From the IMG/VR virus record IMGVR_UViG_3300028920_000022, positions 1 to 64,000 of that record: a stretch of DNA of 64,000 bases; one strand, 5' to 3'. A model generated the notes under the pieces. It ran no database searches. It was not told the origin of the DNA and was given only the letters and a program-made list of their open reading frames with translations. A program made the position numbers and the translations under genes. Every line of letters starts with the position of its first letter. The first letter of the stretch is position 1. Below, piece after piece: positions 4,260 through 27,840 of this stretch.

Positions 4260-4615
4260 ATAATATCTCGAATGATTAATTCAGAACAAGTATATTTTTC
4301 AGCGAAACCATCTGCTGGCGAAAACTTCCCAGGTTTAGAAACCCTAAGTTTTTCATTATAATCTTTATAAAACATATTTTCGCACTCAGGACATATAATA
4401 ATTAAATCGCTTGATAATATTAAATATGAGAAGTAATCTCTTTTTATTTGGACACGATGCCCTAGCTTTTCTAGTAATTTAATCTCATCCCACAGTTTGT
4501 ATTTTCCATAACCAAATCTTATTATTCTGTATAACGTACAAGAGGAATGAAAGATTAGCTTCCATAAAGGCTTCAAACATAGGGAAAAAAACAATATGAT
4601 TAAAAGTTCAATCAT
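4256..4615 (-). CDS. ZnF-IIE family protein with N-terminal hydrophobic segment
   Basis: LGH..CPEC..TCSELIIRDII; ATGA-coupled start. Confidence 0.75.
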   Translation of the reverse strand: MIELLIILFFSLCLKPLWKLIFHSSCTLYRIIRFGYGKYKLWDEIKLLEKLGHRVQIKRDYFSYLILSSDLIIICPECENMFYKDYNEKLRVSKPGKFSPADGFAEKYTCSELIIRDII

Positions 4616-4878
4616 TCTATTATATCTTTCGTTGCAAACTCTCCACAAGTCATATCTGGATAATCAAACCACATATTGTTTTCCAAATAGTAAATGTTCA
4701 AATAAGTACGAAAATTATTGTACCAAGCAATATCTTTATCCCAGCCGCCGGTTACAGTAAAAATGGTACCACAGTTTTCGCATATCATATCATAATGGTT
4801 TGCCAGTATATGTCTTTTGACCAGTTTGTGTCCTAAATTCTCTAACTTTTCTATGGCGTGGTGAGGATATTTGATCAT
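4612..4878 (-). CDS. ZnF-IIE family protein (CGTIFTxxGGW subfamily)
   Basis: LGH..CENCGTIFTVTGGW..TCGEFATKDIIE. Confidence 0.8.
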   Translation of the reverse strand: MIKYPHHAIEKLENLGHKLVKRHILANHYDMICENCGTIFTVTGGWDKDIAWYNNFRTYLNIYYLENNMWFDYPDMTCGEFATKDIIE

Positions 4879-6050: not shown

Positions 6051-6319
6051 TTGATGATATTTCTAACAATCGTTTCGTTGCAAGTATATTCATTATCTTT
6101 TTGCCAACCGTTCCATTTTCCGCCCCAATATATAATAGTTATTTCAGATATATCACCTTCAAATGTACCACCCAATATAGTAAAAATTGTGCCGCAACTG
6201 CGGCAAACAAAAACATTAAATCTCATACCTTTAATATCAAGCGCTTTGCTCGCTGGTGTTTCAATAACCTGATGACCACGCAACTTTAATTTTTCTACAA
6301 ATTTTTGCTTTTTAGTCAT
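6047..6319 (-). CDS. ZnF-IIE family protein
   Basis: RGH..CRSCG..TCNETIVRNIIK. Confidence 0.8.
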   Translation of the reverse strand: MTKKQKFVEKLKLRGHQVIETPASKALDIKGMRFNVFVCRSCGTIFTILGGTFEGDISEITIIYWGGKWNGWQKDNEYTCNETIVRNIIK

Positions 6320-6600
6320 TGAATAATGCTTCTAATAATAGTTTCATCGCATGTTAAGTTATTATAATCCTCCCACTTATCTGTAACATAATTAAATATT
6401 TGCCATTCTGCTCTTGGAAGATTACAAAACCAACCACCGTTTACAGTAAAAATAGTTCCACACTTGGTACATATTTTTTCTTTAATTTTCCCTTTCTCAT
6501 CGTAAGATAGGGGTTGCCTCCATGGAAACACAATCCATTTTAGCGTGTGACCTTTGCCACATAAATATTCCAAACATTCGTTGGAGCTTGAGAAATTCAT
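6316..6600 (-). CDS. ZnF-IIE family protein
   Basis: KGH..CTKCG..TCDETIIRSIIQ. Confidence 0.8.
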   Translation of the reverse strand: MNFSSSNECLEYLCGKGHTLKWIVFPWRQPLSYDEKGKIKEKICTKCGTIFTVNGGWFCNLPRAEWQIFNYVTDKWEDYNNLTCDETIIRSIIQ

Positions 6601-6881
6601 TGGATTATATTTCGGATAATCATTTCTTTACAGGTTATCATGGGATATTCTTCCCAAAATCCGGTCCAATAATATATACAGTACGGATATAATCCATAAA
6701 ATTCATCATCTCTATCCCAGCCACCGTTGAGAGTAAAAACAGTGCCACAATTAATGCACTCAAAATTTCGATTGGGCGAATATAACAATGTAACGCTAGG
6801 AAATGACGTTGATGTTCTTACCAAATGATGACCAAGCTTACCCAACTTTTCTTTATATTTTTGTGGGACAGTTGCCAGCAT
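6597..6881 (-). CDS. ZnF-IIE family protein
   Basis: LGH..CINCG..TCKEMIIRNIIQ. Confidence 0.8.
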   Translation of the reverse strand: MLATVPQKYKEKLGKLGHHLVRTSTSFPSVTLLYSPNRNFECINCGTVFTLNGGWDRDDEFYGLYPYCIYYWTGFWEEYPMITCKEMIIRNIIQ

Positions 6882-7138
6882 TACTCTATTACTTCCCGAA
6901 TTATAAACTCATCACATGTTTCGTTTTTATATTCTAACCATTCTGTGTAACTGTGTCGATAATATATTTTGATACCAAAACCGATTGTAGAAAATGCTGC
7001 ACCACAACCATCACATATTGTTATTTTAGAACGCCTTGGGCTAGAATGCAATATTTCCTTCGCGGATTTTTCTATTAAACTATGACCACGTGTTTCTAAT
7101 TGTTTTCGGTATCTTTGAGGTAGTGGTCTTATATTCAT
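6881..7138 (-). CDS. ZnF-IIE family protein
   Basis: RGH..CDGCG..TCDEFIIREVIE. Confidence 0.8.
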   Translation of the reverse strand: MNIRPLPQRYRKQLETRGHSLIEKSAKEILHSSPRRSKITICDGCGAAFSTIGFGIKIYYRHSYTEWLEYKNETCDEFIIREVIE

Positions 7139-7177
7139 GCCGCATCCTACCGCACCAAGCGAAAAATGTCTAGAACA

Positions 7178-7615
7178 TTATTCTATAATATTTTGTATAA
7201 TTGCTTCTTTTTCAATTAGAAATATTTTTCTCAAATCTTCTACACTATCAGCAAATCTGGGCCACTCGTCAGTACCGCCTATCTCATATATATATTTTCT
7301 ATCGAAAATACTAATAATTGAAAACACATTAATTGACGTACCTTTGAACTTTTGTTCAGAATCGATAAGCCCAGTATCTGCGAAATATTGGTATTTCGAA
7401 CCAATATATTTCCATGTTTCTAACATTGCTTTGTTTTCCTCGCAATTAAATGTTTCGTATTTTCCACTCCTAAATACTGCTTTGTATATATTTGATACGT
7501 CAACCTCTGGCGAAAGCAACAAATTAACAACTTTAACCAATACACCCTGACAGTACATCCCATCAGTGTCTTCTGGGTCTTTCAAACTATTATGTACTAT
7601 GACGTAATACTTCAT
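7178..7615 (-). CDS. IIE-tail protein without zinc finger
   Basis: ends EAIIQNIIE. Confidence 0.7.
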   Translation of the reverse strand: MKYYVIVHNSLKDPEDTDGMYCQGVLVKVVNLLLSPEVDVSNIYKAVFRSGKYETFNCEENKAMLETWKYIGSKYQYFADTGLIDSEQKFKGTSINVFSIISIFDRKYIYEIGGTDEWPRFADSVEDLRKIFLIEKEAIIQNIIE

Positions 7616-7628
7616 AGTTTACCTTGAG

Positions 7629-7701
7629 CAGGGCAGTCCGGATTCGAACCGAAATCGGCGGAGTTGGAAACCACAATGCTTGCCATTTGCACCACTGCCC
7701 T
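7629..7701 (-). tRNA. tRNA-Trp(CCA)
   Basis: AGGGCAG/CTGCCCT acceptor, anticodon loop TTCCAAC, GGTTCGAATCC. Confidence 0.85.
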
Positions 7702-7753
7702 GGGTCGGTTATGCAACCTCAGTTATCAAATTAACCTTTCGGTCAAGCTTCAG

Positions 7754-7836
7754 TGCTTTGGGAGAGACTCGAACTCTCACGCCCGGAGGGCATCAAATTT
7801 TGAATTTGACATGTCTTCCTGTTCCATCACCAAAGC
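7754..7836 (-). tRNA. tRNA-Leu(CAA)
   Basis: GCTTTGG/CCAAAGC acceptor, TCAAA-TTCAAAA-TTTGA, long variable arm. Confidence 0.9.
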
Positions 7837-7841
7837 GGTTG

Positions 7842-7870
7842 TGAGTCAGGTCGGGATCGAACCCAACCGT
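7842..7870 (-). pseudogene. tRNA 3'-half remnant (T arm plus acceptor 3' strand)
   Basis: GGTTGGGTTCGATCCCGACCTGACTCA; no matching 5' strand found. Confidence 0.4.
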
Positions 7871-7934
7871 TTTACTTTGCCGCTAGCCTTAACAACGTTT
7901 AGAATTTGTTGTCTCAGTTTTTCCTCTTGTTCTG

Positions 7935-8165
7935 TCATTTCTTGTCCAAAATCTTTTCTAAGTCCTCTGCGACTTGTTCTATTCTTATTTCTCTATCAAG
8001 CTCTATTTTGATCGGATCGATAACCACCAGTTCACCCTCTATATTTTTCCTAACTTCTTCCTCTTTCTTTTTTAAAACTTTTCTTACGGATTCATCAAAA
8101 CCCCTAAGTTCGTACCTAGAAATTTCTTTAGCCCAAGTCAAACCCTCGTATTTTGCCTTTTCCAT
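7935..8165 (-). CDS. hypothetical coiled-coil protein
   Basis: start corrected to MEKAKY, just 3' of tRNA-Pro. Confidence 0.65.
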   Translation of the reverse strand: MEKAKYEGLTWAKEISRYELRGFDESVRKVLKKKEEEVRKNIEGELVVIDPIKIELDREIRIEQVAEDLEKILDKK

Positions 8166-8167
8166 AG

Positions 8168-8240
8168 TCCGGGATGCATGATTCGAACATGCGTCTCGTG
8201 GTCCCAAACCACGTGCTAAACCAAACTCAGCTAAACCCGG
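8168..8240 (-). tRNA. tRNA-Pro(TGG)
   Basis: CGTGG-TTTGGGA-CCACG anticodon arm, GTTCGAATC T loop. Confidence 0.9.
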
Positions 8241-8474
8241 TTATTCAATTATCTCTTTAATTAAGAAATCTTCGTCTGACATCTTACAGGGTAAAAACTC
8301 CTGGATCCTTTCTTTTGTTTCTTGAATTGAACAATGTACATCGTATTTCCCAGTTTTGACAAACAGTTGCAGATGTAAATGTTGTAATGGCTGCCTACAC
8401 TTTTTACAAATTATAGTCGGTGGCTCATCGTATGCCGGCGGTAACTCCTCCCAAATGTGTCTGTATCCGCTCAT
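8241..8474 (-). CDS. ZnF-IIE family protein
   Basis: HIW..CKKC..PCKMSDEDFLIKEIIE. Confidence 0.8.
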   Translation of the reverse strand: MSGYRHIWEELPPAYDEPPTIICKKCRQPLQHLHLQLFVKTGKYDVHCSIQETKERIQEFLPCKMSDEDFLIKEIIE

Positions 8475-8755
8475 TCATCCATCCATTGTTCAATATATAC
8501 AGGTCCCATTTCCCATATTTTCTTAAAACATTCGTTGAGCAAGTTCGCATCGTCTTCTTCGCAAAAATGATACATTAAAGTGTCGTTAGTGCTCCAATTC
8601 ATACACCCATCCCACTTTAAATGTCCTTTTACCCTGGTTATAGAAACGTCCTTACCATTTTCTCTCCTGTTTTCTTTTATGCTAAAATCCATACTATACT
8701 CTCCAGGAATGATTTCTAGAAAATGATATTTGCGTATGTTAACAACTTCACTCAT
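8471..8755 (-). CDS. hypothetical protein
   Basis: coupled ORF, KWDGC..HFC motif. Confidence 0.7.
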   Translation of the reverse strand: MSEVVNIRKYHFLEIIPGEYSMDFSIKENRRENGKDVSITRVKGHLKWDGCMNWSTNDTLMYHFCEEDDANLLNECFKKIWEMGPVYIEQWMDE

Positions 8756-8928
8756 TCTATTATGTCCTTGATTATCATTTCCCTCACTATTTTTTCAACA
8801 TCAACACCATTTTTGATAGCTTCTTCGCATATGAATTTAAACTCTTCTTCGTAAAATGAAGACGCTCCGTCCGGCGACAATGTTTTGGCTTTTGGTCTCT
8901 TTTTAATCCGCGAACATGGTTTATTCAT
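8752..8928 (-). CDS. 58-aa IIE-tail protein
   Basis: hand translation MNKPCSR...IVREMIIKDIIE; ATGA overlaps on both sides. Confidence 0.7.
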   Translation of the reverse strand: MNKPCSRIKKRPKAKTLSPDGASSFYEEEFKFICEEAIKNGVDVEKIVREMIIKDIIE

Positions 8929-9215
8929 CGAACCAACCCTCTTTCCCTCAAAGTTTGATAAGCAAATTCCATCGCCTCCCCCTCGGATCCTATAAAAATA
9001 TAGTTTAACTCATCATCGTCTGTTTCGTATACACCATACAAATCGTCTTCAATCATCCGGTAATCCACCCATCTACCATCTTCTCCAGAAACAATAGACT
9101 TTAGCATTGGCTTAATATAAGCAGGACGTACACTAAAAGTACCCTTAGTATATTGGGCTTGAATTCCGCTAAAATAGTTTAATTCATTTGCAATTTGTTC
9201 AAATGGGTGGGTCAT
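8925..9215 (-). CDS. hypothetical protein
   Basis: AAGGAGG SD upstream of ATG. Confidence 0.7.
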   Translation of the reverse strand: MTHPFEQIANELNYFSGIQAQYTKGTFSVRPAYIKPMLKSIVSGEDGRWVDYRMIEDDLYGVYETDDDELNYIFIGSEGEAMEFAYQTLRERGLVR

Positions 9216-9250
9216 GATTCCTCCTTATGTCATTTAATGGTTCCTTTCGT

Positions 9251-9324
9251 TGGGGTGATCGACGGGTAACGCTCCCGCTACAACAGTGCCACAAACTGTC
9301 CGCTCACTTTTTGCGTTCGATCAC
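9251..9324 (-). tRNA. tRNA-His(GTG), C73 plus encoded CCA, no encoded G-1
   Basis: GTGATCG/CGATCAC acceptor, ACAGT-TTGTGGC-ACTGT; atypical T loop AGCGTTA. Confidence 0.85.
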
Positions 9325-9326
9325 AG

Positions 9327-9399
9327 CTCCCCGAGTTGAGATTCGAACTCACGACCACGCGGTTAACAGCCGCGCGCTCTACCACTGAGCTATCGGGGA
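9327..9399 (-). tRNA. tRNA-Asn(GTT)
   Basis: TCCCCGA/TCGGGGA acceptor, loop CTGTTAA, canonical D and T arms. Confidence 0.95.
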
Positions 9400-9406
9400 A
9401 TATTCT

Positions 9407-9751
9407 TCATTCTATCACTTCTTTTATTATTACCTCCTTACAACTGCATTTTACTAGTGTATTTAAATTGTCAAAATCTTTTTTACTAAAATATCCATAC
9501 GCAGTGAAAACAGATTTCTTAAAACCAAATGTACTGTTTATGTAATCCCAAGTTGTTTCTATTTTTAGATTCAGATCATTGCTTTCCAAAACTTCTTCAA
9601 CAAAATTAATTTTTGATCTTAATCCGCGCATATCGTACAATTTAGCTAAATTCGTCAAATAAAACCCTACACCTCGGCAGCATAAACATCTGTAATATAC
9701 TGCAGGACCTGAAACGTGGTCTAAAATTAGTTTATGATTCTTATCTATCAT
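9407..9751 (-). CDS. ZnF-IIE family protein
   Basis: NHKL..CLCC..SCKEVIIKEVIE. Confidence 0.75.
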   Translation of the reverse strand: MIDKNHKLILDHVSGPAVYYRCLCCRGVGFYLTNLAKLYDMRGLRSKINFVEEVLESNDLNLKIETTWDYINSTFGFKKSVFTAYGYFSKKDFDNLNTLVKCSCKEVIIKEVIE

Positions 9752-9762
9752 AGTGTTTCCAG

Positions 9763-9835
9763 TGGTACGGGTCGGAGTCGAACCAACGACGCTCGCCTCT
9801 TCGGGGCGACGCTCTACCTGCTGAGCTACCGTACC
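9763..9835 (-). tRNA. tRNA-Phe(GAA)
   Basis: GGTACGG/CCGTACC acceptor, TCGCC-CCGAAGA-GGCGA (C33, G37). Confidence 0.85.
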
Positions 9836-9880
9836 ATGATTGTTTTATACGCATGTTTTTGTGTTATCTCCTAACTTTAG

Positions 9881-9955
9881 CGCCCATACCGAAATTCGAA
9901 TTCGGGATCTCTTGATTGACAATCAAGCGTCTTAACCTAGCTGGACCATATGGGC
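9881..9955 (-). tRNA. tRNA-Asp(GTC)
   Basis: GCCCATA/TATGGGC acceptor, CTTGA-TTGTCAA-TCAAG. Confidence 0.9.
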
Positions 9956-9956
9956 A

Positions 9957-10034
9957 TGGCTGGGATGGCAAGGATTGAACTTGCAACCTCCAAATTCAGA
10001 GTCTGGCGCTCTGTTCCAATTGAGCTACATCCCA
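9957..10034 (-). tRNA. tRNA-Gln(CTG), encoded CCA
   Basis: TGGGATG/CATCCCA acceptor, CCAGA-CTCTGAA-TTTGG. Confidence 0.9.
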
Positions 10035-10051
10035 TTATTAACCTACTTAAA

Positions 10052-10087
10052 ACCAAAAAACCCGGCTAGCCATTTTTGCTGCCGGGT
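10052..10087 (-). terminator. intrinsic terminator (candidate attenuator) upstream of tRNA cluster
   Basis: minus strand CCCGGCAGC-AAAAATG-GCTAGCCGGG followed by TTTTTT. Confidence 0.8.
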
Positions 10088-10114
10088 CGTGCCATCGAAT
10101 TAAATTAAAAGATC

Positions 10115-10246
10115 TTAGAACCACATATCTTTTGGCACGATCTGGCTGGGCTGATTATTAAATTGCCGTGGATCGCCAGGCGCATTACAATCCAACCACT
10201 TATCCAAATGATTAAAAGAATGTAATTTTTGTGCCAAAATACTCAT
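10115..10246 (-). CDS. 43-aa candidate leader peptide
   Basis: MSILAQKLHSFNHLDKWLDCNAPGDPRQFNNQPSQIVPKDMWF, ending just before the terminator. Confidence 0.6.
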   Translation of the reverse strand: MSILAQKLHSFNHLDKWLDCNAPGDPRQFNNQPSQIVPKDMWF

Positions 10247-10368
10247 GATTGTGTCTCTATATGTTTAAATGCCTATCTGTGCTCGACTTTTTTGAAACGT
10301 TATTTAAAAGCTCCCTGTGTCCAGTATGGAAGATCATGGACACGCTATTTGCGTATCCACTGAACACA

Positions 10369-10510
10369 GGGAAAATCTAAACGATCCCCCGGTATCCGGC
10401 TCATCTGGCGGAAAAATCAGATACCAGGGGGACCAAACTAGGAAAAATTTAAGCGATCCCCCGGTATCCAATCTTGGGGGGGAAAGAAGAATACCGGGGA
10501 ACCAAACCAA
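10369..10510. repeat. two ~70-bp tandem hairpin-forming units
   Basis: GGAAAA..CGATCCCCCGGTATCC...ATACC(A)GGGG..ACCAAAC occurs twice. Confidence 0.75.
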
Positions 10511-10712
10511 CGCCAACCAACTTGAGTAGCAACAAACACCCTACAACACCACTAAACGAAGGTCAAGAAGAATCGGGAGCCGCCCAAAAATGCGGGTCCC
10601 AGACCAGCTGGGACCCTACCCTCACCGCAATGTGCAGGATGCCTATATTTATAAAGGAGCAGGACGAATTTGTCAAGCCATTTTCTCCCAGGCAATATCT
10701 AAACATATTAAC

Positions 10713-11120
10713 ATGGATCCTAGAAATTTAAACAAAATCGTACGAATGGCAGAAGATTTCGAAAAAATGGCTCAGCTCAATTCCCAGAGCGGATTAGTTA
10801 TGGATGTGCTGAAAGCTGCGAAACTAGCGTACCAACAGGGAAGAGATGTTCTACCAAGTTGGCTGCGTCCAGATCTAGAAAAGGTAAGAAGTGCTGTTCG
10901 TGTGTTTTATGGCGCGGTTCATGCCGGCAATACCAAACCACAAGAGTTGTCTAAATTCCTGGGCAATGTTGCACAACAATCAAACGCTCTTGCTTCTCGA
11001 ATTCAACAAAACGAAGACAACCCATATGCAGATCAAACGGCAATGACGGCATCTCAGATTGTGGTTCCATACCTTAACGCACTTAGTCAGTTCGCCCACA
11101 CAATGCGCCGGATGATGTGA
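10713..11120 (+). CDS. hypothetical protein, possibly virion-associated
   Basis: start corrected to MDPRNLNKIVRMAEDFEKMAQ. Confidence 0.65.
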   Translation: MDPRNLNKIVRMAEDFEKMAQLNSQSGLVMDVLKAAKLAYQQGRDVLPSWLRPDLEKVRSAVRVFYGAVHAGNTKPQELSKFLGNVAQQSNALASRIQQNEDNPYADQTAMTASQIVVPYLNALSQFAHTMRRMM

Positions 11121-11183
11121 AGATTCCAACTGATACAATCACGCCTTCAAAACCACAGCCTCGCGATGTAGCCCGGGTTCTGC

Positions 11184-11531
11184 CTACAAAGTAACATTAT
11201 AGATACAGAGCTTGCCCCAGGTTAAACTGTCCACAGGATAGGTAATACCTGGCGGACCAAACTTGTTGGCTTCAATTGTAACCGTGGCATGGGCAACAAA
11301 TATCACCACATCTGCCAAGTCACGATTATCCTCTTCCTCAAAAGAACGAATAACCATAATGCGCTGGTTTAGCTGTTTCACCTTGTCTGGATAATCTGGA
11401 TCTGCAGCAATAATAGCGTCAAATTCGCTGCCTGACATATAATCATTGATATACAGCTGTTTAACCAATGCATTTCTTACACTGGCAGTAAGATCGTTAT
11501 TAACAAAGATTATAGCGGCGGGAAGACCCAT
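11184..11531 (-). CDS. hypothetical protein
   Basis: ORF with protein-like composition. Confidence 0.7.
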   Translation of the reverse strand: MGLPAAIIFVNNDLTASVRNALVKQLYINDYMSGSEFDAIIAADPDYPDKVKQLNQRIMVIRSFEEEDNRDLADVVIFVAHATVTIEANKFGPPGITYPVDSLTWGKLCIYNVTL

Positions 11532-11533
11532 TT

Positions 11534-11995
11534 TTAGAGCGTAACCTCGAAACCTTCGTTTAACTGATCGTCAGCGTCACTGACATCTTCGGGCTTTTCT
11601 TCCTCTTTTTGTTCTTTTTGCCACTTTGAGAAGGATTCGGTAGAACCGTCTTCATGGGCTTTCATCCATTTTCCATCACACGAATAAGCAATATCCTGGT
11701 TATCTTTTACCTTAACTTCGTTGGCTCCGACCATATCCATTTTCTTCATAATTTCGTAACAAGCCAAGATAGCTTCTCGTGAGGATTCTACACCTTCTCG
11801 GTATTCGTCTGCTAGCTGAGTAAGATTAGACAGGTTACTTTCGGCGTCCTGCAATTTTGCTTTAAGATCCGAATAGGTTTTTTTAATCTTTCCCAAGTGT
11901 TTTTCTACACTTTTACGGGAGTGTTTACCATTCAGTTTTTCTGGTCTTTTAGCCGCCAATGAGATAAGAATACGTTTTCTTTGGATAGATTTCAT
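11534..11995 (-). CDS. coiled-coil hypothetical protein
   Basis: heptad-rich centre, acidic C-terminus. Confidence 0.7.
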   Translation of the reverse strand: MKSIQRKRILISLAAKRPEKLNGKHSRKSVEKHLGKIKKTYSDLKAKLQDAESNLSNLTQLADEYREGVESSREAILACYEIMKKMDMVGANEVKVKDNQDIAYSCDGKWMKAHEDGSTESFSKWQKEQKEEEKPEDVSDADDQLNEGFEVTL

Positions 11996-12085
11996 AAAAA
12001 GCCTAAAAATAACAATCTTATCTGTATGCGGCGATATTACCCTGGAATTTTGTCGATGACAGCGCTGAGAATGACCGAGCTATAT

Positions 12086-12505
12086 ATGGCAAAAATAGAC
12101 CCAAAGAAAATGGAAGCCTTTATCAAAAAGAGTTTGAATCAAGTTTTGGCGCCATTTTGTGGAGAAAAACTAACAGAAACAACCGAAGATATTATTAGAC
12201 ACCAGCTGATAAACAAACTACAAACCCTAAAAACGGCTAGAACAATAGATGATTTTGATATTCGTGGAATTAGTTTTTCAGATGATGGGCGTGTAGATGT
12301 TTCTTGTGATATCCAACCCAGCATTCTTGGCTGCGAACTTCTATCCCCAGAAAATTATGTTACACATGACTGGGTGGATGATTGTGTTATCAAGCGATGT
12401 CATACCTGTGGTTTGGTTATTCAAATAAATGATGGAGAATATTTGGTATCTATTGGAGACAATTTGAGCTGCCAAGAATATGCTATCAGAGAAATAATCG
12501 AGTGA
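12086..12505 (+). CDS. ZnF-IIE module fused to a tail-sheath-C-like domain
   Basis: start MAKIDPKK; HDW..CHTCG..SCQEYAIREIIE; sheath resemblance judged by eye only. Confidence 0.65.
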   Translation: MAKIDPKKMEAFIKKSLNQVLAPFCGEKLTETTEDIIRHQLINKLQTLKTARTIDDFDIRGISFSDDGRVDVSCDIQPSILGCELLSPENYVTHDWVDDCVIKRCHTCGLVIQINDGEYLVSIGDNLSCQEYAIREIIE

Positions 12506-20328: not shown

Positions 20329-21360
20329 CTAATATCTCGTCAGCGTATATTCACATTCAGGTTTGCTTCCTGCAAGAATAGCGTTTCCGCAGGTAATTCT
20401 TCCCAGGTCTTCCTCCAGAGAAGGAACAAATACCAACACATCAAAACCAGCTTTTTTCAAAGAATCTTCTGCTTGCTGGTAAGGATAAAATTGCTGATAA
20501 GCGTTTTCATCCCAGAATTTGTTCTGTACGCATGCATCGGTTTTGTGCATTGGAGTAATTTTACACATAAATTTATCCGGATCAAACAGTTTTGCCAGTT
20601 TAGTCCCACTAATTGCCGCATCAGTGAGAGCAAAGTTTAGAGCAATTTTACGTCCAACAACATCGGTAATGTTAGACATAATTTTGGAAATATCTTCCAA
20701 ACCCAAAGCAGACCCACCAAAATCTTCGAATCTTCTCTGCTCATCAGTAGTATTGATGGACAACTGTAGCCCAGCATTTCCTTCCATTAAATGGTTTTTA
20801 ATATCCATCCACTGGCAAATAAAAGCTTCGAGTCTTCTATTGTTTCGGGGCATCATGGTGGAAACAACGGGATGAAAACCCCAACCTCGTTTTTCTCTAA
20901 TTTCGTGTACCATATGTGGTGTAACTGATAATACATCATTATTGAAGGTGGGCTCACCCATTCTCGCAAAATGCAGGTTTAAACGATCTGTATGTTTTAC
21001 CTCGGGATGAATGGAAATAGCCGCGCGCATTTGGTTTAATAGATCGCCGTAGGTTGCATTATATCCTGGACCTACTTTGGGAACGTCGCAGAATTTACAT
21101 TTCATAGAGCACCCATATTGAGAAGAAATAGTAATCACCCATTTCTTTTCTAGTGGCATTAGCTTGCCATGAGGCACTCCGTTTATTTGATCTTTTAACC
21201 CCATAAAATCGGCTTTGACATTCTTTTCTTTACCATAATCGCCAAGAGAAAGACACTCCAGTTTTCTACCAGGATCAAAAAGAGATCTTTCGCCTTCAAC
21301 GATCAAGATGGTGCCGGTTGGAACAGCGATTTTTTCTTTGATTATAGAAAACATATTCAA
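20329..21360 (-). CDS. RlmN/Cfr-like radical SAM enzyme (putative RNA methyltransferase)
   Basis: ISSQYGCSMKCKFC, RMGEP, LQLSIN, C-terminal ITCG. Confidence 0.8.
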   Translation of the reverse strand: MNMFSIIKEKIAVPTGTILIVEGERSLFDPGRKLECLSLGDYGKEKNVKADFMGLKDQINGVPHGKLMPLEKKWVITISSQYGCSMKCKFCDVPKVGPGYNATYGDLLNQMRAAISIHPEVKHTDRLNLHFARMGEPTFNNDVLSVTPHMVHEIREKRGWGFHPVVSTMMPRNNRRLEAFICQWMDIKNHLMEGNAGLQLSINTTDEQRRFEDFGGSALGLEDISKIMSNITDVVGRKIALNFALTDAAISGTKLAKLFDPDKFMCKITPMHKTDACVQNKFWDENAYQQFYPYQQAEDSLKKAGFDVLVFVPSLEEDLGRITCGNAILAGSKPECEYTLTRY

Positions 21361-22720: not shown

Positions 22721-23464
22721 TCACTCTTCTTTTTGAATTAAGAATTTCCCAATATATTCGCGATCTTGGGAGAAGATAGGTATATCCCAATCTTGATCAA
22801 GTTCGGTTCTAAACGTATCATCAGAAAATTTAATTGTTTTTCTAACTACACACCAGCCTCGCTTTTGAAAGGTAGCGCATTGATTCCAATCAATATTCTT
22901 ATGGCGAAGAAGCATTTCTTTCATACGTTTTGTATTCTTTTTGTGAAGCTCTTTGTGGGAGAAGTGTTTTTGGGCAAGCCCAGATATAGAATTTCTGATG
23001 GCATCAATCTGTCTCCAGTAAAAATAATTAACCACATCTTCTCTAGGAATAGTGAAACTACGGGCATCAAATATTGCTTTTTTATTAGGACGTTCTCCTT
23101 GTGCTAGCATAGCATAATTGAAAGCAACCGTAGCAGTACTAGCACTTACGCTGCTCATTTTTTGAACATTTTTATCAAACCACGGAGAAGTATCAAACTT
23201 TTCATAATCGTTGATTAACACCGAAATTTCGTCAGATTGGCAGTAGGCAATTTTGCTACCTTGTATACTATCTAGCAAATCTCTTGCAGCAGAAGACATT
23301 GCTTCTATTATTCTTAGATCCCAGGGTTTATCACATCCGCGAGTATAGGAGTGGAAGCTCTTACCATCTACTCTAACTATAGTTGGCATTCTTGGGGTAA
23401 TATAGATACGAGAAACATTCTCGTATCGTTTCATACGGTTGCCTAAGTCGGAATGATCAGTCAT
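22721..23464 (-). CDS. thg1: tRNA(His) guanylyltransferase (Thg1-like)
   Basis: RMKRYE, RVDGKSFH, YCQSDEIS, FDAR, YFYWRQ.DA.RNS. Confidence 0.95.
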   Translation of the reverse strand: MTDHSDLGNRMKRYENVSRIYITPRMPTIVRVDGKSFHSYTRGCDKPWDLRIIEAMSSAARDLLDSIQGSKIAYCQSDEISVLINDYEKFDTSPWFDKNVQKMSSVSASTATVAFNYAMLAQGERPNKKAIFDARSFTIPREDVVNYFYWRQIDAIRNSISGLAQKHFSHKELHKKNTKRMKEMLLRHKNIDWNQCATFQKRGWCVVRKTIKFSDDTFRTELDQDWDIPIFSQDREYIGKFLIQKEE

Positions 23465-23946
23465 GCTGTTAGTAATTCTTTGGGTATATTTTTAGTTACT
23501 ATTTTTCGTATATATTGTCTATGTTTGTAATATTCCTCATTAGTTTGTTGACCATCTACTAATTCTCTCGTCCACTTTTCTCTAAGATCTAGCCACTCTA
23601 TATAATTATTAGCCTCTAATTTTGGTTCCCATTTATCGTCCACACCTTCGTCGCTACGAATTCCTTTCAAGGATATTCCAAGAGTGTTGGCTAACCAATA
23701 TTGCAAATAAGAAGAAAACTCGGAATGTCCTTGCAGAAAAGCAAGTTTTCTTTTGCTAAGAATAGAGATGTATAAACTGCCTATATGTTGTTTTGCTTCC
23801 AAACTAATTTCTATATATTTAGAATCATCACTAATATCTATACGACCATGTTTTCCGAATTTGTTCCTAACCAAATCGCTAATATAATTAGCAACAGTTT
23901 CTGGTTCTATATTACGCTTAAAAGTAATAAATGAGTGATTAGTCAT
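23461..23946 (-). CDS. hypothetical protein
   Basis: coupled ORF. Confidence 0.65.
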   Translation of the reverse strand: MTNHSFITFKRNIEPETVANYISDLVRNKFGKHGRIDISDDSKYIEISLEAKQHIGSLYISILSKRKLAFLQGHSEFSSYLQYWLANTLGISLKGIRSDEGVDDKWEPKLEANNYIEWLDLREKWTRELVDGQQTNEEYYKHRQYIRKIVTKNIPKELLTA

Positions 23947-24326: not shown

Positions 24327-24544
24327 TTTAGCCCCCTTAACATTCCAAGAACACGTTGCCTAGCCGCCAACTCATTTTCCCATCGCCTAACAATAGCCGT
24401 TTCTTTCTGTCTAAAATGAGGGTATAACTCTACCCGCTCGTTAGCAGCTTCTAACATGTTTTGGGCATGTTGAACCTGTTGCTCTAAACGTGTCTGTAGC
24501 TCTTTGACAATAAGAGTTACTTTGTTGTTGATCTTGTCAGTCAT
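24323..24544 (-). CDS. coiled-coil hypothetical protein
   Basis: start corrected to MTDK. Confidence 0.55.
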   Translation of the reverse strand: MTDKINNKVTLIVKELQTRLEQQVQHAQNMLEAANERVELYPHFRQKETAIVRRWENELAARQRVLGMLRGLK

Positions 24545-25460
24545 TGAAAAACCTATCCGCATAACAAAACTGAAAACCACACCTGGAAGCAAACGTTTCG
24601 TCCGCCTTCAGATCTCCCACCATTAAACATAACGCTGGGTTTAATTTATATTTGACGATAAAATATACTCCGATACCAGGCATCGGCTTTCTACTCCACG
24701 TTCTAATCGGTGGTACTCCAGAAGGATCGAATTTGTAATCAATATCATGACCCAGTAGTTTATTGGTATATTCAAACAACTCAGTAGCTTTTTCCAACGT
24801 CAGGTCTTTTTTAGCAACTCCGGATTGATTTGATGCCCCACACAAAATGAACCCATTATTTTTGAATTCGGTTAACTTTTCTGCGCGCTCCGGGAGTATT
24901 TTTATTTGACTTTTTTCGGTTGGAAACTTACCATTTCCCCCAACACAATCTCTCAATGTTCCATCGTAATCCAAGATTAGTGCTTTGTTTTTGAATGATG
25001 AATTCCAATTCCTTTTGAATGGCACCTTAACTATTGAATCAAAACCTTCTTCCGTAGTGGGTTTTTGAAATTCCTTACGATATTTGAAAATAACAGCAGG
25101 CGGAAAAATGCCCGGGTCATTAGATTGAGATTCTAATATTTGATTATATTTATTCATGGATCGCAAACAATAATTAACCTGAGAGTCTTCAATTGAGGTT
25201 TGCATCCAATGGCATTCTACATTAGCTTTGTATTTCTTGGCTAGGTCAATAAATGGTTTTCTAGACGTTTGAGTAGCAAATAGGTTGTCCAACACTATAT
25301 TTGAACCGTTTTTGAGTTGCCGTTCCATTTCTGGCAACAGGGAGTTTAATTTGCCGCCGACTGTATCTCTGTTCAAACGAAAATATCCCTCATTCAGAAA
25401 CTGTTCTGTGACGGTAGTTTTTCCTGAGGCGGGAAAACCCAAAACTAATATTACGTTCAC
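24537..25460 (-). CDS. polynucleotide 5'-kinase/3'-phosphatase (PNKP-like; P-loop plus HAD-IIIA)
   Basis: GFPASGKTT, LDYDGTLR, SNQSG, RKPMPG, MVGD..D. Confidence 0.9.
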   Translation of the reverse strand: MNVILVLGFPASGKTTVTEQFLNEGYFRLNRDTVGGKLNSLLPEMERQLKNGSNIVLDNLFATQTSRKPFIDLAKKYKANVECHWMQTSIEDSQVNYCLRSMNKYNQILESQSNDPGIFPPAVIFKYRKEFQKPTTEEGFDSIVKVPFKRNWNSSFKNKALILDYDGTLRDCVGGNGKFPTEKSQIKILPERAEKLTEFKNNGFILCGASNQSGVAKKDLTLEKATELFEYTNKLLGHDIDYKFDPSGVPPIRTWSRKPMPGIGVYFIVKYKLNPALCLMVGDLKADETFASRCGFQFCYADRFFND

Positions 25461-25776: not shown

Positions 25777-26442
25777 TTACTCTTGCACCCATGGGGACTG
25801 GTTTGTGTAGGGTTGGTTGCATTGTATACTCCTCTTGAATTGTTCCAACCTATCATAAAACCGCGGCTCCCACAAGTTCAAATAATCTTTTCCTTTTTGA
25901 GATGGATTATTGATTAATTCAAAATATATTTCGCCGCATTTTTGATAATCTAATATTTTTCCGTGCTTTGTAATTTGTGTGCCAAAATCTAAAACCCTCA
26001 TGGCATGAAATAATGATTTCTTTGCCTTCTCCAGACTGCCGGCAGTAAAACGCACCTCAGCTTTTTCAAAGTCTAATCTGGATTTTCTACATATGTTGTT
26101 CGCAAGTACGGTTTTGTTTGGAGTAAAACTAAAAACAGCCGTATTCAGTAGCAACAACTCTTCTGGTAAGAAAATACATTCCATTGCGGAGATAGAATGT
26201 TCCTTTAGTTTTTGAGAAAAAGATTGGGTATCGTACACTATGGCACTGAATTGCCTACCTAAGTATTCTCCCTTCAAATTTAGGCAATCTATTTCTATTG
26301 GTTTAATATATGTATTACCCACAACAATATAATCGTAGTCTGATTTGTGGGAGTTTGTACCATATACACGTGACCCAAACGGATATACATTGAGCACATC
26401 CGCATTATTGAGGTTCAGGGCTTTAATCAAATGACCATACAT
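25777..26442 (-). CDS. Pol-beta superfamily nucleotidyltransferase
   Basis: YPFGSRVYGT..SDYDYIVV; KKSLFHAMRVL. Confidence 0.85.
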   Translation of the reverse strand: MYGHLIKALNLNNADVLNVYPFGSRVYGTNSHKSDYDYIVVGNTYIKPIEIDCLNLKGEYLGRQFSAIVYDTQSFSQKLKEHSISAMECIFLPEELLLLNTAVFSFTPNKTVLANNICRKSRLDFEKAEVRFTAGSLEKAKKSLFHAMRVLDFGTQITKHGKILDYQKCGEIYFELINNPSQKGKDYLNLWEPRFYDRLEQFKRSIQCNQPYTNQSPWVQE

Positions 26443-26720: not shown

Positions 26721-26916
26721 TAATAGAAACCTTTCTTTTTCTAATTTCCTTTTTAGCCATTTGCTCGCATATTAAACAAGCACGACATTCGTACTGTATT
26801 TCTTGTTTGTTTTTGTAAATCGTATGTTTGAATCGTATTACTGGGTGCCCGGCATGATCCGTGTCCCATTCTTCCGTTAAATTGTGTTCTTTGCAATCTG
26901 TTCCGGATATTTTCAT
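26551..26916 (-). CDS. hypothetical protein
   Basis: ATGA-coupled start; 3' part overlaps next ORF. Confidence 0.4.
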   Translation of the reverse strand: MKISGTDCKEHNLTEEWDTDHAGHPVIRFKHTIYKNKQEIQYECRACLICEQMAKKEIRKRKVSISERTRTDLGRKPRKRNAKKFETYGEKTLYRSRKGRGRLKNDEMFGDMRSDSWGAEW

Positions 26917-27500
26917 TTGGAAAGCACCACCACCATGTGACCATTAACCCAATCAAACGAAAATTTTCTTGCCCCGCATTCTTTACACATATCAATCATA
27001 TTTTGTTTACTAAAATAATGTAAATGATGGGGATTATTATCTGGTTTGGATGGTACCGAAATTATTGAATATTTTGTGGAAACCCTAACAATTTCTTGCA
27101 AAGCCTTTGTGGGGTTTTCTAGGTGCTCTATGACTTCCAGAGCAGTAACGACATCAAAAGAATCGTTGTGAAAAGGTATTGCGGAAATACTACCAAGAAC
27201 GAGAGAAATGTTAACCCCTCCGTTTTGTAGCTTGGATAAGATTTCAATTTTGCTAGGGTCGTTGTCCAAAACAGTGACTGATGTTTCTGGAAATTCCTCT
27301 AACAAAGGGTACAGGAAGCCACCGCGACCATAACCTATATCTAAGATAGAAGCCGGACACAAGCCTTTAATGATGCCGAGGCACTTTTTTACCCTGGGAA
27401 GTATATTTTTCCTTTTGAAGTCTAATAATATTTCTTTTCCGCCACCTTGTATAAAACAATTGGCAAAGCGCATATAATGTGTTTTGTCATTCAATGACAT
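26913..27500 (-). CDS. class I SAM-dependent methyltransferase
   Basis: ILDIGYGRG, SFDVVTALEVIEHL; start uncertain. Confidence 0.9.
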   Translation of the reverse strand: MSLNDKTHYMRFANCFIQGGGKEILLDFKRKNILPRVKKCLGIIKGLCPASILDIGYGRGGFLYPLLEEFPETSVTVLDNDPSKIEILSKLQNGGVNISLVLGSISAIPFHNDSFDVVTALEVIEHLENPTKALQEIVRVSTKYSIISVPSKPDNNPHHLHYFSKQNMIDMCKECGARKFSFDWVNGHMVVVLSK

Positions 27501-27840
27501 CACGAATGATACAATTTCTACAGGAATACTCTTCAATATTGTCGCTGGCTTTTCCAAGCCAGCGAAATGGAGAGCCCTGATACCAGTGCCAAATATTTCC
27601 GGTACATGTTACAGAGAATTTATTTTTACAGTTTGGACAAACAAAAACAATATCAGTAAAACCAAATTTAATTCTTTTCCAGAAAGGGATTTTGTGACCA
27701 ACACGAAGTATTTCTTTTATGGCAAAATCTTTATTCTTAAAAATTTCTTTGTAGTGTAGAGCGTTCAAATCTCCTATGTCGTATGCCCAGCACAACATCT
27801 GTGCCGTTTGTTTTTTAGTTTTTATTTCTTGTGGGGTCAT
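27487..27840 (-). CDS. ZnF-IIE family protein
   Basis: VGH..CPNC..SCRNCIIRDVIE. Confidence 0.8.
   Translation of the reverse strand: MTPQEIKTKKQTAQMLCWAYDIGDLNALHYKEIFKNKDFAIKEILRVGHKIPFWKRIKFGFTDIVFVCPNCKNKFSVTCTGNIWHWYQGSPFRWLGKASDNIEEYSCRNCIIRDVIE

What the first reader, a model, noticed from the sequence alone, without database searches (positions are those of the whole stretch)
9251..9326. tRNA-His lacks an encoded G-1 and the same genome encodes Thg1
Seen: base -1 of tRNA-His is T (9325), the discriminator is C73, and only 2 nt separate it from tRNA-Asn. A clear Thg1-like gene lies at 22721-23464. Established: HisRS normally needs G-1, most bacteria encode it genomically, and Thg1-like proteins add it by templated 3'-5' addition opposite C73. 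Inference: a self-contained enzyme-substrate pair. The T loop is also atypical (AGCGTTA).
Basis: partly seen in the sequence, partly recalled or inferred. Interest (0 to 1): 0.7.

Follow-up and report, generated by a model that had tools for sequence, protein, structure and literature searches.

The report
Phage tRNA-His without G-1, plus Thg1-like enzyme
A 459-kb sediment phage carries an odd but real histidine tRNA gene that lacks the usual extra 5' G, and also an enzyme able to add that G, but comparison with other phages shows the enzyme is mainly a general tRNA-repair tool rather than a dedicated partner.

Summary
Minus-strand 9324-9251 is a real tRNA-His(GUG): -1 is T9325, the discriminator is C9254, CCA is encoded, and it starts 2 nt after tRNA-Asn. 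ARAGORN and Rfam miss it.

Its AGCGUUA T-loop and GG-less D-loop form a recurrent elbow variant. The variant is shared by at least 15 phage tRNA-His genes and by the cellular tRNA-His of some CPR bacteria.

ORF 22721-23464 is a bacterial-type Thg1-like protein (TLP). It matches B. thuringiensis TLP at E=3e-68 and keeps the catalytic D/DE residues. That enzyme adds G-1 opposite C73 efficiently in vitro, so the proposed pair is biochemically coherent. The nearest relative that has a tRNA-His shows the same arrangement.

The pair is not self-contained or obligate:
- The TLP sits beside a Pnkp-like kinase/phosphatase, a nucleotidyltransferase and a methyltransferase, which looks like a tRNA-repair module.
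- 16 of 22 near-complete TLP-bearing phage genomes have no tRNA-His.
- TLP phages that have one split about evenly between U-1 and encoded G-1.
- U-1/C73 tRNA-His also occurs in phages without TLP, such as cyanophage S-PM2.

Verdict: a real, testable, moderately interesting new member of a known kind.

The parts
9251..9324 (-). tRNA-His(GUG) gene with encoded CCA (9253-9251). C73 is 9254, the anticodon is 9292-9290, the T-loop AGCGTTA is 9273-9267, and the D-loop AAAAGTG is 9311-9305. It has A8 and a 3-bp D-stem.
   Evidence: Sequence. Leave-one-out covariance model at 68 bits, E~1e-20. Family covariation. ARAGORN -mt call. Missed by standard ARAGORN and Rfam.
9325..9326 (-). 2-nt spacer: C9326, then T9325, which is position -1 of tRNA-His. 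U-1 is the predicted leader nucleotide at the RNase P cleavage site.
   Evidence: Sequence. T is at -1 in 10 of 10 G-1-less members of the variant family and in 17 of 18 G-1-less canonical phage tRNA-His. Only 8 of 16 other tRNAs of this genome have T at -1. In genes that encode G-1, the T sits at -2 instead.
9327..9399 (-). tRNA-Asn(GUU), immediately upstream in the same tRNA cluster. The cluster runs Gln, Asp, Phe, ORF, Asn, His.
   Evidence: ARAGORN. Rfam 54.4 bits.
22721..23464 (-). Thg1-like protein (TLP), 247 aa, a bacterial-type 3'-5' nucleotidyltransferase. The catalytic residues D33 and D78/E79 are conserved.
   Evidence: PF04446 8e-30. PHROG 4717 5.7e-86. BtTLP 4KGK E=2.9e-68 over residues 6-242. 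Invariant D33, G34, S77, D78 and E79 in alignment A2. It lacks the eukaryotic HINNLYN-type motif in the alignment to 3WBZ.
23461..23946 (-). 161-aa ORF whose stop overlaps the TLP start. Function unknown.
   Evidence: ORF list. No Pfam or PHROG match.
24537..25460 (-). Pnkp-like polynucleotide kinase/3'-phosphatase, an RNA-end healing enzyme.
   Evidence: AAA_33 5e-12, PNK3P 5e-5 and a HAD hydrolase match. PHROG 505 'polynucleotide kinase' 1.7e-10.
25777..26442 (-). Pol-beta superfamily nucleotidyltransferase.
   Evidence: PF18765 1.4e-5, just below the cutoff. PHROG 388 'nucleotidyltransferase' 9e-11.
26913..27557 (-). SAM-dependent methyltransferase with a weak match to a phage 'tRNA methyltransferase' family.
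   Evidence: Methyltransf_11 1.7e-16. PHROG 4752 9e-5.

Best explanation
The window holds a functional phage tRNA-His gene of an unusual structural class. It has a CPR-type elbow: T-loop A54-G55-C56-G57-U58, and a D-loop with A in place of G18. It has the bacterial identity nucleotide C73 but U instead of G at -1.

Shown here: the gene, its register, the family covariation, and the presence of an intact BtTLP-like enzyme inside a tRNA-repair gene cluster.

Inferred mechanism:
1. Host RNase P cuts the Asn-His precursor between U-1 and G+1. This leaves a 5'-monophosphate on a 7-bp acceptor stem.
2. The phage TLP binds through the His anticodon, activates the 5' phosphate with ATP or GTP, and adds one G templated by C73. 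This creates the G-1:C73 pair that bacterial HisRS recognises.
3. The host HisRS then charges the tRNA, because the phage encodes no HisRS.

G-1 addition is most likely one task of a broader enzyme. The main job of the TLP in phages appears to be 5'-end repair or maturation of tRNAs, alongside Pnkp, RNA ligase and the CCA-adding enzyme. Having the TLP would then allow this phage lineage to keep a G-1-less tRNA-His.
For: - The tRNA is real and its register is fixed.
- It is the only tRNA-His in the genome.
- The genome has no phage HisRS and no class-A RNase P RNA.
- The TLP matches 4KGK at E=3e-68 and keeps the catalytic residues.
- BtTLP adds templated G-1 to C73-tRNAHis 50-fold better than to A73.
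- TLPs have a His-anticodon-dependent G-1 mode.
- The conserved U sits just 5' of the inferred RNase P site. It is at -1 in G-1-less genes and at -2 in genes that encode G-1.
- An orthologous U-1/C73 tRNA-His occurs with a TLP in the nearest such relative, G020.
- The same combination recurs in G013, G041, G044/G233, G046 and G069.
- The repair context is present: Pnkp, nucleotidyltransferase and methyltransferase next to the TLP, plus an RNA ligase and a CCA-adding enzyme elsewhere in the genome.
Against: - There is no direct evidence for the mature 5' end, because no RNA runs hold this sequence.
- The TLP is not tied to a phage tRNA-His. 16 of 22 near-complete TLP-bearing phages have none, including the closest relatives.
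- About half of the TLP-bearing lineages with a tRNA-His encode G-1.
- U-1/C73 tRNA-His exists in phages without TLP (G011; S-PM2). A G-1-less tRNA-His can therefore persist without a phage TLP.
- BtTLP prefers 5'-truncated tRNAs over G-1 addition by 5- to 160-fold.
- The window tRNA has A8 and a weak D-stem.
Confidence: 0.55

Rival explanations
1. The TLP works only as a tRNA 5'-end repair enzyme, part of a Pnkp/ligase/CCA toolkit that counters host tRNA-damaging defences or nucleolytic decay. The G-1-less tRNA-His works without G-1, either charged less efficiently or by a tolerant host HisRS. On this view, finding both in one genome is coincidental.
For: - The repair-gene neighbourhood.
- Most near-complete TLP-bearing phages have no tRNA-His.
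- G-1-less C73 tRNA-His is conserved in TLP-free cyanophages and in G011.
- The kinetic preference of BtTLP for truncated tRNAs.
- Published jumbo-phage surveys file Thg1 under RNA repair (PMC7824862).
Against: - BtTLP-type enzymes add G-1 to any C73 tRNA-His with a 5'-monophosphate at rates like yeast Thg1.
- If the enzyme and this tRNA meet in the cell, G-1 addition is hard to avoid.
- C73 is retained in all G-1-less family members. That is expected if the G-1:C73 pair is still formed.
Confidence: 0.3
2. The tRNA-His is a decaying or non-functional tRNA-like remnant.
For: - It is missed by ARAGORN and Rfam.
- It has A8 instead of U8, and a 3-bp D-stem with an A-A mismatch.
- The single-sequence fold z-score is only -1.1.
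Against: - The acceptor stem has 7 of 7 pairs. The anticodon and T stems, the GUG loop, C73 and CCA are all intact.
- It scores 68 bits against a model built without it.
- The G020 ortholog shares A8-A9 and the CGC/GCG D-stem, so these are lineage traits and not decay.
- The sequence is identical in an independent sample.
- It is the only tRNA-His in a genome with 17 tRNAs.
Confidence: 0.07
3. RNase P cuts one nucleotide upstream, so U-1 is kept and stands in for G-1. Alternatively, a host-encoded TLP supplies G-1 rather than the phage enzyme.
For: - T at -1 is almost invariant in G-1-less phage tRNA-His.
- The host is unknown, so a host TLP cannot be excluded.
Against: - U-1 cannot pair with C73. 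From established knowledge of E. coli pre-tRNA-His processing, which was not tested here, the -1:73 pair is the known cause of the shifted RNase P cut.
- In genes that encode G-1, the conserved T lies at -2, so it marks the leader side of the cut.
- TLPs are rare in bacteria. Only 1 of the 14 control genomes had one, and that one is an archaeon. None of 5 CPR genomes had one.
Confidence: 0.08

Closest known systems
Bacillus thuringiensis Thg1-like protein (BtTLP, PDB 4KGK/4KGM)
   Same: Closest solved relative: E=2.9e-68 across nearly the full length, same length class, same catalytic D/DE motif. Its documented activities are templated G-1 addition to C73-tRNAHis and repair of 5'-truncated tRNAs.
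   Different: BtTLP is cellular, and its host encodes G-1, so its natural G-1 substrate is unclear. Here the enzyme is phage-encoded, sits next to a Pnkp-like gene, and shares a genome with a natural G-1-less C73 tRNA-His.
Archaeal TLP with a tRNA-His lacking encoded G-1 (for example Methanothermobacter, as cited in PMC3061083)
   Same: The logic is the same. A C73 tRNA-His without a genomic G-1 is completed by templated 3'-5' addition (discussion).
   Different: That system is cellular and essential. This one is viral and facultative, and it is not conserved across TLP-bearing relatives.
Eukaryotic Thg1 (yeast, Candida 3WBZ, human 3OTB)
   Same: Same fold family (PF04446) and same two-step chemistry.
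   Different: Eukaryotic Thg1 adds a non-templated G opposite A73 and carries the HINNLYN-type segment. The window protein aligns there with RQIDAIRNSISG. Similarity is only E=2e-13 to 2e-8.
Annotated phage 'tRNA-His guanylyltransferase' genes (PHROG 4717; Bacillus phage Bc431v3 gp143, Pseudomonas phage 201phi2-1 gp319, Lak megaphages, Caulobacter, Xanthomonas and Mycobacterium phages)
   Same: Same protein family. 164 INPHARED records carry it at 29-48% identity. Its presence in large phages has been noted in the literature.
   Different: In the papers found, the gene is treated as tRNA modification or repair. None links it to a G-1-less phage tRNA-His.
Alphaproteobacterial G-1-less tRNA-His (A73, co-evolved HisRS)
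   Same: No encoded G-1.
   Different: Those tRNAs have A73 and often G1:U72, and they need no G-1. Agrobacterium phage Atu_ph07 carries that type. The window tRNA keeps C73, the partner of G-1.
CPR (Patescibacteria) tRNA-His with the AGCGUWA T-loop
   Same: Same elbow variant and, for Daviesbacteria and Levybacteria, an identical T-arm GCGGG-AGCGTTA-CCCGT. Same AAAAGUR D-loop.
   Different: All CPR copies encode G-1. The variant is sporadic within CPR: 1 AGCGTTA and 1 ATCGTAA among the top 30 hits in 121 genomes sampled.
T4-type Pnkp/RNA-ligase tRNA repair
   Same: A Pnkp-like kinase/phosphatase sits next to the TLP, and an RNA ligase and a CCA-adding enzyme are in the genome.
   Different: The classical module heals anticodon-loop breaks. 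A TLP would add 5'-terminal nucleotide restoration to that.

Membership tests
tRNA-His (bacterial type) | Cloverleaf with a GUG anticodon in a 7-nt loop | tested here: met
   Sequence. Covariance-model alignment over the full length. Covariation in all four helices.
tRNA-His (bacterial type) | Discriminator C73 | tested here: met
   C9254 aligns to the last position of model R2, which is N73.
tRNA-His (bacterial type) | Genomically encoded G-1 paired with C73 | tested here: not met
   Position -1 is T9325. The alternative register, with G9324 as G-1, is excluded by the family alignment anchored on the T-arm.
tRNA-His (bacterial type) | Canonical elbow: G18G19 in the D-loop and T54-Psi55-C56 in the T-loop; detectable by RF00005 | tested here: not met
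   The D-loop is AAAAGUG and the T-loop is AGCGUUA. There is no RF00005 hit at E<=10.
AGCGUWA-elbow tRNA-His family (phage and CPR; models R1 and R2) | T-loop AGCGUWA with D-loop AAWAGYR and a short variable loop, scored by a model built without the query | tested here: met
   68 bits, E~1e-20. The T-arm is identical to that of Daviesbacteria and Levybacteria.
Thg1/TLP superfamily (PF04446) | N-terminal Thg1 catalytic domain above the Pfam threshold | tested here: met
   103.8 bits against a cutoff of 29.2.
Thg1/TLP superfamily (PF04446) | Catalytic carboxylates (human Thg1 D29, D76 and E77, numbering from memory) | tested here: met
   RVDG (D33) and QSDE (D78, E79) align with BtTLP and are invariant in A2.
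Thg1/TLP superfamily (PF04446) | C-terminal Thg1C domain | tested here: inconclusive
   PF14413 scores 19.2 bits, below the 26.3 cutoff. The alignment to BtTLP nevertheless runs to residue 242.
Bacterial-type TLP (as opposed to eukaryotic Thg1) | Closest to characterised bacterial TLPs, and lacking the eukaryote-specific HINNLYN-type segment | tested here: met
   4KGK at 3e-68, against 3WBZ at 2e-13 and 3OTB at 2e-8. The query has IDAIRNSISG where CaThg1 has VDCHINNLYN.
Bacterial-type TLP | Templated 3'-5' nucleotide addition (G-1 opposite C73; repair of truncated 5' ends) | not testable with these tools
   Activity is known for BtTLP only. It needs an enzyme assay.
Dedicated enzyme-substrate pair (TLP with a G-1-less tRNA-His) | The two co-occur across related genomes more often than either occurs alone | tested here: not met
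   - 16 of 22 near-complete TLP-bearing records have no tRNA-His.
- TLP-bearing lineages with a tRNA-His split 6 with U-1 against 7 with G-1.
- Among tRNA-ascertained records at least 90% complete, U-1 is found in 1 of 4 TLP-bearing and 1 of 6 TLP-free records.
- S-PM2 and G011 have a U-1/C73 tRNA-His and no TLP.

Phage tRNA-repair module | End-healing (Pnkp) and sealing (RNA ligase) enzymes present, with healing genes adjacent | tested here: met
   The Pnkp-like gene starts 1.1 kb from the TLP gene on the same strand. The genome has an RNA ligase (PF09414, 102 bits) and a CCA-adding enzyme (PF01743, 57 bits).

The most novel reading that the evidence does not exclude
Phage-encoded U-1/C73 tRNA-His genes are the long-sought natural G-1-addition substrates of bacterial-type TLPs. 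Under this reading the phage makes its own tRNA-His chargeable only after a phage enzyme has acted on it, which amounts to a licensing step independent of the host's unusual RNase P cut.

Separately, the A54:U58/G55/A18 elbow would be a structurally distinct tRNA-His class that has moved between CPR bacteria and phages and that escapes U54/Psi55 modification.
Probability: 0.15. Interest if true: 0.75.

Novelty: new member of a known kind. Interest (0 to 1): 0.55.

Why it matters
Bacterial and phage Thg1-like proteins have lacked an obvious physiological G-1 substrate, because bacterial tRNA-His genes encode G-1. This phage offers a natural, fully sequence-defined candidate pair: a C73 tRNA-His with U at -1, and a BtTLP-like enzyme. 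The pair can be tested with one transcript and one recombinant protein.

The survey done here also sets limits on the idea.
- Phage tRNA-His genes frequently lack G-1: about 40% of a pattern-based sample, and fewer when counted by lineage.
- This happens with or without a TLP.
- How such tRNAs are charged in TLP-free phages, such as T4-like cyanophages, is an open question.

The work also shows that a conserved non-canonical tRNA elbow can hide a phage tRNA from standard annotation.

Tried and rejected
1. Standard detection. ARAGORN in bacterial mode, including lowered thresholds, and Rfam at E<=10 do not find the gene. Its MFE fold is not better than shuffles. Single-sequence evidence alone was therefore rejected as proof.

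2. Alternative register. I considered G9324 as an encoded G-1 with an 8-bp helix, as the MFE fold suggests. I rejected it because the extra A:U pair is not conserved, and the family alignment places 12 nt between the T-loop and C73.

3. BLAST against INPHARED. Neither the tRNA cluster nor the tRNA itself gave a match.

4. 'The AGCGUWA loop is a general CPR trait'. Rejected: an even sample of 121 Patescibacteria genomes shows mostly canonical T-loops.

5. 'The family is invisible to annotation'. Rejected: 12 of 15 family members are found by ARAGORN, and several by Rfam. Only the window copy and three others are missed.

6. Enrichment of G-1-less tRNA-His among TLP-bearing phages. The counts show no detectable association. 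The samples are small and not phylogenetically independent.

7. Search of 16 isolate genomes with model R1. The large-batch run used strict filters and lost canonical tRNAs, so it was repeated in smaller batches. 'No hit' for XacN1, 201phi2-1 and BcepSauron, where the first look returned zero candidates, is not reliable evidence of absence.

8. RNA-seq test of the 5' end. No RNA run holds this sequence. DNA contigs only confirm the sequence.

9. TAA recoding suggested by the tRNA(UUA). Reading through each stop codon in turn gave no region-specific gain.

10. Host inference from the CPR-like T-arm. Not accepted. A 459-kb phage in a CPR cell seems physically implausible (my own reasoning), and the variant is sporadic in CPR.

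Full report
**Source.** The window is the first 64 kb of a 458,729-bp IMG/VR virus record. CheckV rates it 100% complete. The only near-identical public run is a marine sediment metagenome. The genome carries 16 tRNAs that standard tools detect, including a cluster on the minus strand at 7.6-10.0 kb.

**1. The observation.** Read on the minus strand, 9324-9251 folds as a cloverleaf.
- It has a perfect 7-bp acceptor stem (GTGATCG/CGATCAC).
- It has a 5-bp anticodon stem and the loop TTGTGGC, with anticodon GTG at 9292-9290.
- It has a 4-nt variable loop, a 5-bp T-stem, discriminator C9254 and an encoded CCA.
- Position -1 is T9325.
- Only C9326 and T9325 separate it from the discriminator of tRNA-Asn.

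The gene is nevertheless invisible to standard tools.
- ARAGORN in bacterial mode, even at reduced thresholds, does not call it.
- Rfam's tRNA model gives nothing at E<=10 on a 96-nt slice.
- The single-sequence fold is no better than shuffles.
- ARAGORN's mitochondrial mode calls it, but that mode gives about 87 spurious calls in this genome.

The reasons are the non-canonical T-loop (AGCGTTA), a D-loop without GG (AAAAGTG), A8 in place of U8, and a 3-bp D-stem.

**2. Comparative proof that it is a tRNA-His in this register.** A pattern scan of IMG/VR asked for a His anticodon loop, an AGCGTWA loop and a CCCA end. It returned 17 loci, of which 15 are clean cloverleaves sitting in phage tRNA arrays.
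- In the alignment of these with the window, 96.5% of cells pair and 18 of 21 pairs show compensatory changes.
- A scan of bacterial genomes found the same loop in 22 cloverleaf-consistent genes. 17 of these are the tRNA-His of CPR/Patescibacteria MAGs: Daviesbacteria, Levybacteria, Gottesmanbacteria, Nomurabacteria, Paceibacteria and Saccharibacteria.
- A covariance model built from 13 phage and 7 CPR sequences, without the window, scores window 9324-9254 at 68 bits (E~1e-20) over its full length. The next hit has E=0.57. That alignment has 98.3% of cells paired.

This fixes +1 = G9324 and N73 = C9254. It excludes the alternative reading in which G9324 would itself be an encoded G-1.

No other tRNA-His exists in the genome. 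A contig from an independent marsh metagenome is identical over 9274-9330.

**3. The elbow variant.** The T-loop reads A54 G55 C56 G57 U58 W59 A60, and the D-loop reads AAWAGYR.
- Relative to the canonical elbow, the U54:A58 pair is swapped to A54:U58.
- Psi55 becomes G.
- G18 becomes A.
- G19 and C56 are kept.

This structural reading is inference. The two loops do change together. The orthologous tRNA-His of the related phage G020 has the same acceptor stem, A8-A9, D-stem, anticodon stem and T-stem. It differs in having TTCGATT in the T-loop, a GG-containing D-loop and a longer variable loop.

The variant is sporadic within CPR. Among the top 30 tRNA-His hits in 121 evenly sampled genomes, 1 has AGCGTTA and 1 has ATCGTAA. 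Most family members are found by ARAGORN and Rfam. I found no paper describing this loop.

**4. The enzyme.** ORF 22721-23464 (247 aa) matches Pfam Thg1 at 8e-30 and PHROG 4717 'tRNA-His guanylyltransferase' at 6e-86.
- Its closest solved relative is the Bacillus thuringiensis Thg1-like protein 4KGK, at E=2.9e-68 over residues 6-242.
- Eukaryotic Thg1 matches only at 2e-13 to 2e-8.
- The catalytic RVDG and QSDE motifs (D33, D78, E79) are conserved in it and in four phage homologues.
- It lacks the eukaryotic HINNLYN-type segment.

It is therefore a bacterial-type TLP. For BtTLP, G-1 addition to C73-tRNAHis has kcat/KM 5500 M-1s-1, against 108 for A73. Repair of 5'-truncated tRNAs of any identity is 5- to 160-fold faster still (PMC3061083). 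An archaeal TLP uses an elbow-binding mode for repair and a His-anticodon mode for G-1 addition (PMC4820378).

**5. Genomic context.** Four genes lie upstream of the TLP gene on the same strand:
- an unknown 161-aa ORF;
- a Pnkp-like kinase/3'-phosphatase at 24537-25460;
- a Pol-beta nucleotidyltransferase at 25777-26442;
- a SAM methyltransferase at 26913-27557.

Elsewhere the genome encodes an RNA ligase and a CCA-adding enzyme. It has no RtcB, no HisRS and no class-A RNase P RNA. The TLP is thus embedded in a tRNA repair and maturation toolkit. The tRNA must rely on host RNase P and host HisRS.

**6.

*(a) Starting from the TLP.* IMG/VR holds at least 433 relatives, and INPHARED has 164 records.
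- Of 22 TLP-ascertained records that are at least 90% complete, 16 have no tRNA-His.
- 3 have a U-1/C73 tRNA-His (G041, G044, G233).
- 3 encode G-1 (G051, G062, G226).
- The closest TLP relatives G001, G003 and G004 have no tRNA-His.
- The closest relative that has one, G020, has the orthologous U-1/C73 gene.

*(b) Counting lineages.* TLP-bearing phages with a tRNA-His fall into 6 U-1 lineages and 7 G-1 lineages.

*(c) Starting from the tRNA.* In a pattern-based sample of canonical phage tRNA-His, 18 genes lack G-1 and 25 encode it.
- 17 of the 18 G-1-less genes have T at -1.
- 12 of the 18 belong to T4-like cyanophages.
- Among tRNA-ascertained records at least 90% complete, U-1 occurs in 1 of 4 TLP-bearing and 1 of 6 TLP-free genomes.
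- The S-PM2 record searched, which is its spontaneous deletion mutant, has a U-1/C73-CCA tRNA-His and no Thg1 domain.
- G011 (99% complete) is likewise TLP-free.

*(d) Isolates with a TLP.*
- Bacillus phage Bc431v3 and Rhodococcus phage Grayson carry G-1-less tRNA-His with A73.
- Agrobacterium phage Atu_ph07 carries the alphaproteobacterial type.
- Vibrio phage D181 and Fusobacterium phage Fnu1 encode G-1.

The combination therefore recurs in several lineages, but it is neither necessary nor demonstrably enriched.

**7. Where RNase P cuts.**
- In G-1-less genes the base at -1 is T in 10 of 10 variant-family members and in 17 of 18 canonical genes.
- In genes that encode G-1, the T sits at -2: 6 of 6 in the family, 22 of 25 canonical, and most CPR copies.
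- Other tRNAs of this genome have T at -1 in only 8 of 16 cases.

The conserved U thus tracks the nucleotide just 5' of the expected cleavage site. This supports cleavage at U-1|G+1 and a mature 5' end at G+1 before any addition. This is inference. It is consistent with the known preference of bacterial RNase P for U at -1, which I take from established knowledge and did not test.

**8. Synthesis.** Most likely (about 0.55), the phage TLP adds G-1 opposite C73 to this tRNA as one of its activities. Its wider role would be tRNA 5'-end repair within the Pnkp/ligase/CCA toolkit.
- The main rival (about 0.3) is that the TLP acts only in repair and the tRNA functions without G-1, as it must in TLP-free phages.
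- A pseudogene is unlikely (about 0.07).
- Retention of U-1, or supply of G-1 by a host TLP, are minor alternatives.

Phage Thg1 genes are already annotated and discussed as tRNA modification or repair. In the library searched, I found no paper linking them to G-1-less phage tRNA-His.

**9. Verdict.** This is a new member of a known kind, TLP-dependent completion of a C73 tRNA-His, in a phage, with a notable non-canonical tRNA elbow. Interest is moderate. It offers a clean, cheap biochemical test bearing on the unresolved physiological role of bacterial-type TLPs. The comparative data argue against a dedicated pair.

Noticed in passing
G000:451588-451662 (outside the window); also L016:4363-4439: A tRNA with anticodon UUA, a TAA suppressor, scoring 71.5 bits in Rfam. 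Another phage contig with the variant tRNA-His carries one too. Reading through TAA, TAG or TGA in turn gave no region-specific gain in ORF coverage, so there is no evidence of recoding.
   Followed up: partly
window 6316-12505, both strands: A family of small ORFs (58-174 aa) is interspersed with the tRNA genes. They share a C-terminal motif of the form C-x-E-x-x-I-(R/K)-x-(I/V)-I-(E/Q), for example ...TCDETIIRSIIQ, ...SCKEVIIKEVIE and ...SCQEYAIREIIE. Several also have CxxC pairs. Function unknown.
   Followed up: no
L269, L270, L284, L297, L299, L316, L318, L321, L323, L324, L327, L329, L331, L343, L345: The sole tRNA-His of several CPR/Patescibacteria MAGs has the AGCGUWA T-loop and a GG-less D-loop, with G-1 encoded. 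Two sequence types exist. The Microgenomates type has a T-arm identical to the window's. The Parcubacteria type is close to phage L016. The trait is sporadic in an even CPR sample.
   Followed up: partly
L427:398-472 (Synechococcus phage S-PM2); L152, L159, L171, L173, L175, L192, L197, L198, L200, L215, L226, L230: T4-like cyanophages carry a conserved tRNA-His with U at -1 and C73, and no Thg1 domain in the S-PM2 record. The Synechococcus elongatus control genome also lacks Thg1. How this tRNA acquires His identity is unexplained.
   Followed up: partly
L018:5410-5721 and 4423-4727; L015:3239-3835; L016, L026, L028, L030: Phage contigs that carry the variant tRNA-His also hold very large tRNA arrays of up to about 30 genes. 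They also carry tmRNA genes, a bacterial class-A RNase P RNA (L018, 192 bits) and a ROOL RNA (L015, 286 bits).
   Followed up: no
L408 (Bacillus phage vB_BceM_Bc431v3, record 156445-156519) and L402 (Rhodococcus phage Grayson): These cultured TLP-bearing phages have tRNA-His genes with C1:G72, A73 and no G at -1. Grayson also has a non-canonical T-loop, ATCAATA. Both are candidate experimental systems.
   Followed up: partly
window 9330-9409, seen in run X2: A low-depth contig from a marsh metagenome matches 9274-9330 exactly and then skips 78 nt. This would be a relative in which tRNA-Asn is precisely absent upstream of tRNA-His. The evidence is weak: depth 2.2 and a 25-nt side.
   Followed up: no
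L013:2277-2351 and 2544-2618; L027:392-467: Some phage contigs carry two or three tRNA-His-like genes. One has the T-loop AUCGUUA, another A54...U58 variant. L027 has a canonical tRNA-His next to a variant copy with two acceptor mismatches.
   Followed up: no
G000:441163-441239, 108016-108087 and 396326-396411 (outside the window): The tRNA finders disagree. Rfam reports a weak tRNA (31.3 bits) that ARAGORN does not call. ARAGORN calls tRNA-Ile(tat) and an 86-nt tRNA-Met that are absent from the Rfam list. More non-canonical tRNAs may be present in this genome.
   Followed up: no
window 20329-21360 (-): A 343-aa protein with a very strong match to PHROG 24834, a family of unknown function (4e-116), and a weak radical-SAM signal. 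It lies about 1.4 kb downstream of the TLP gene on the same strand.
   Followed up: no
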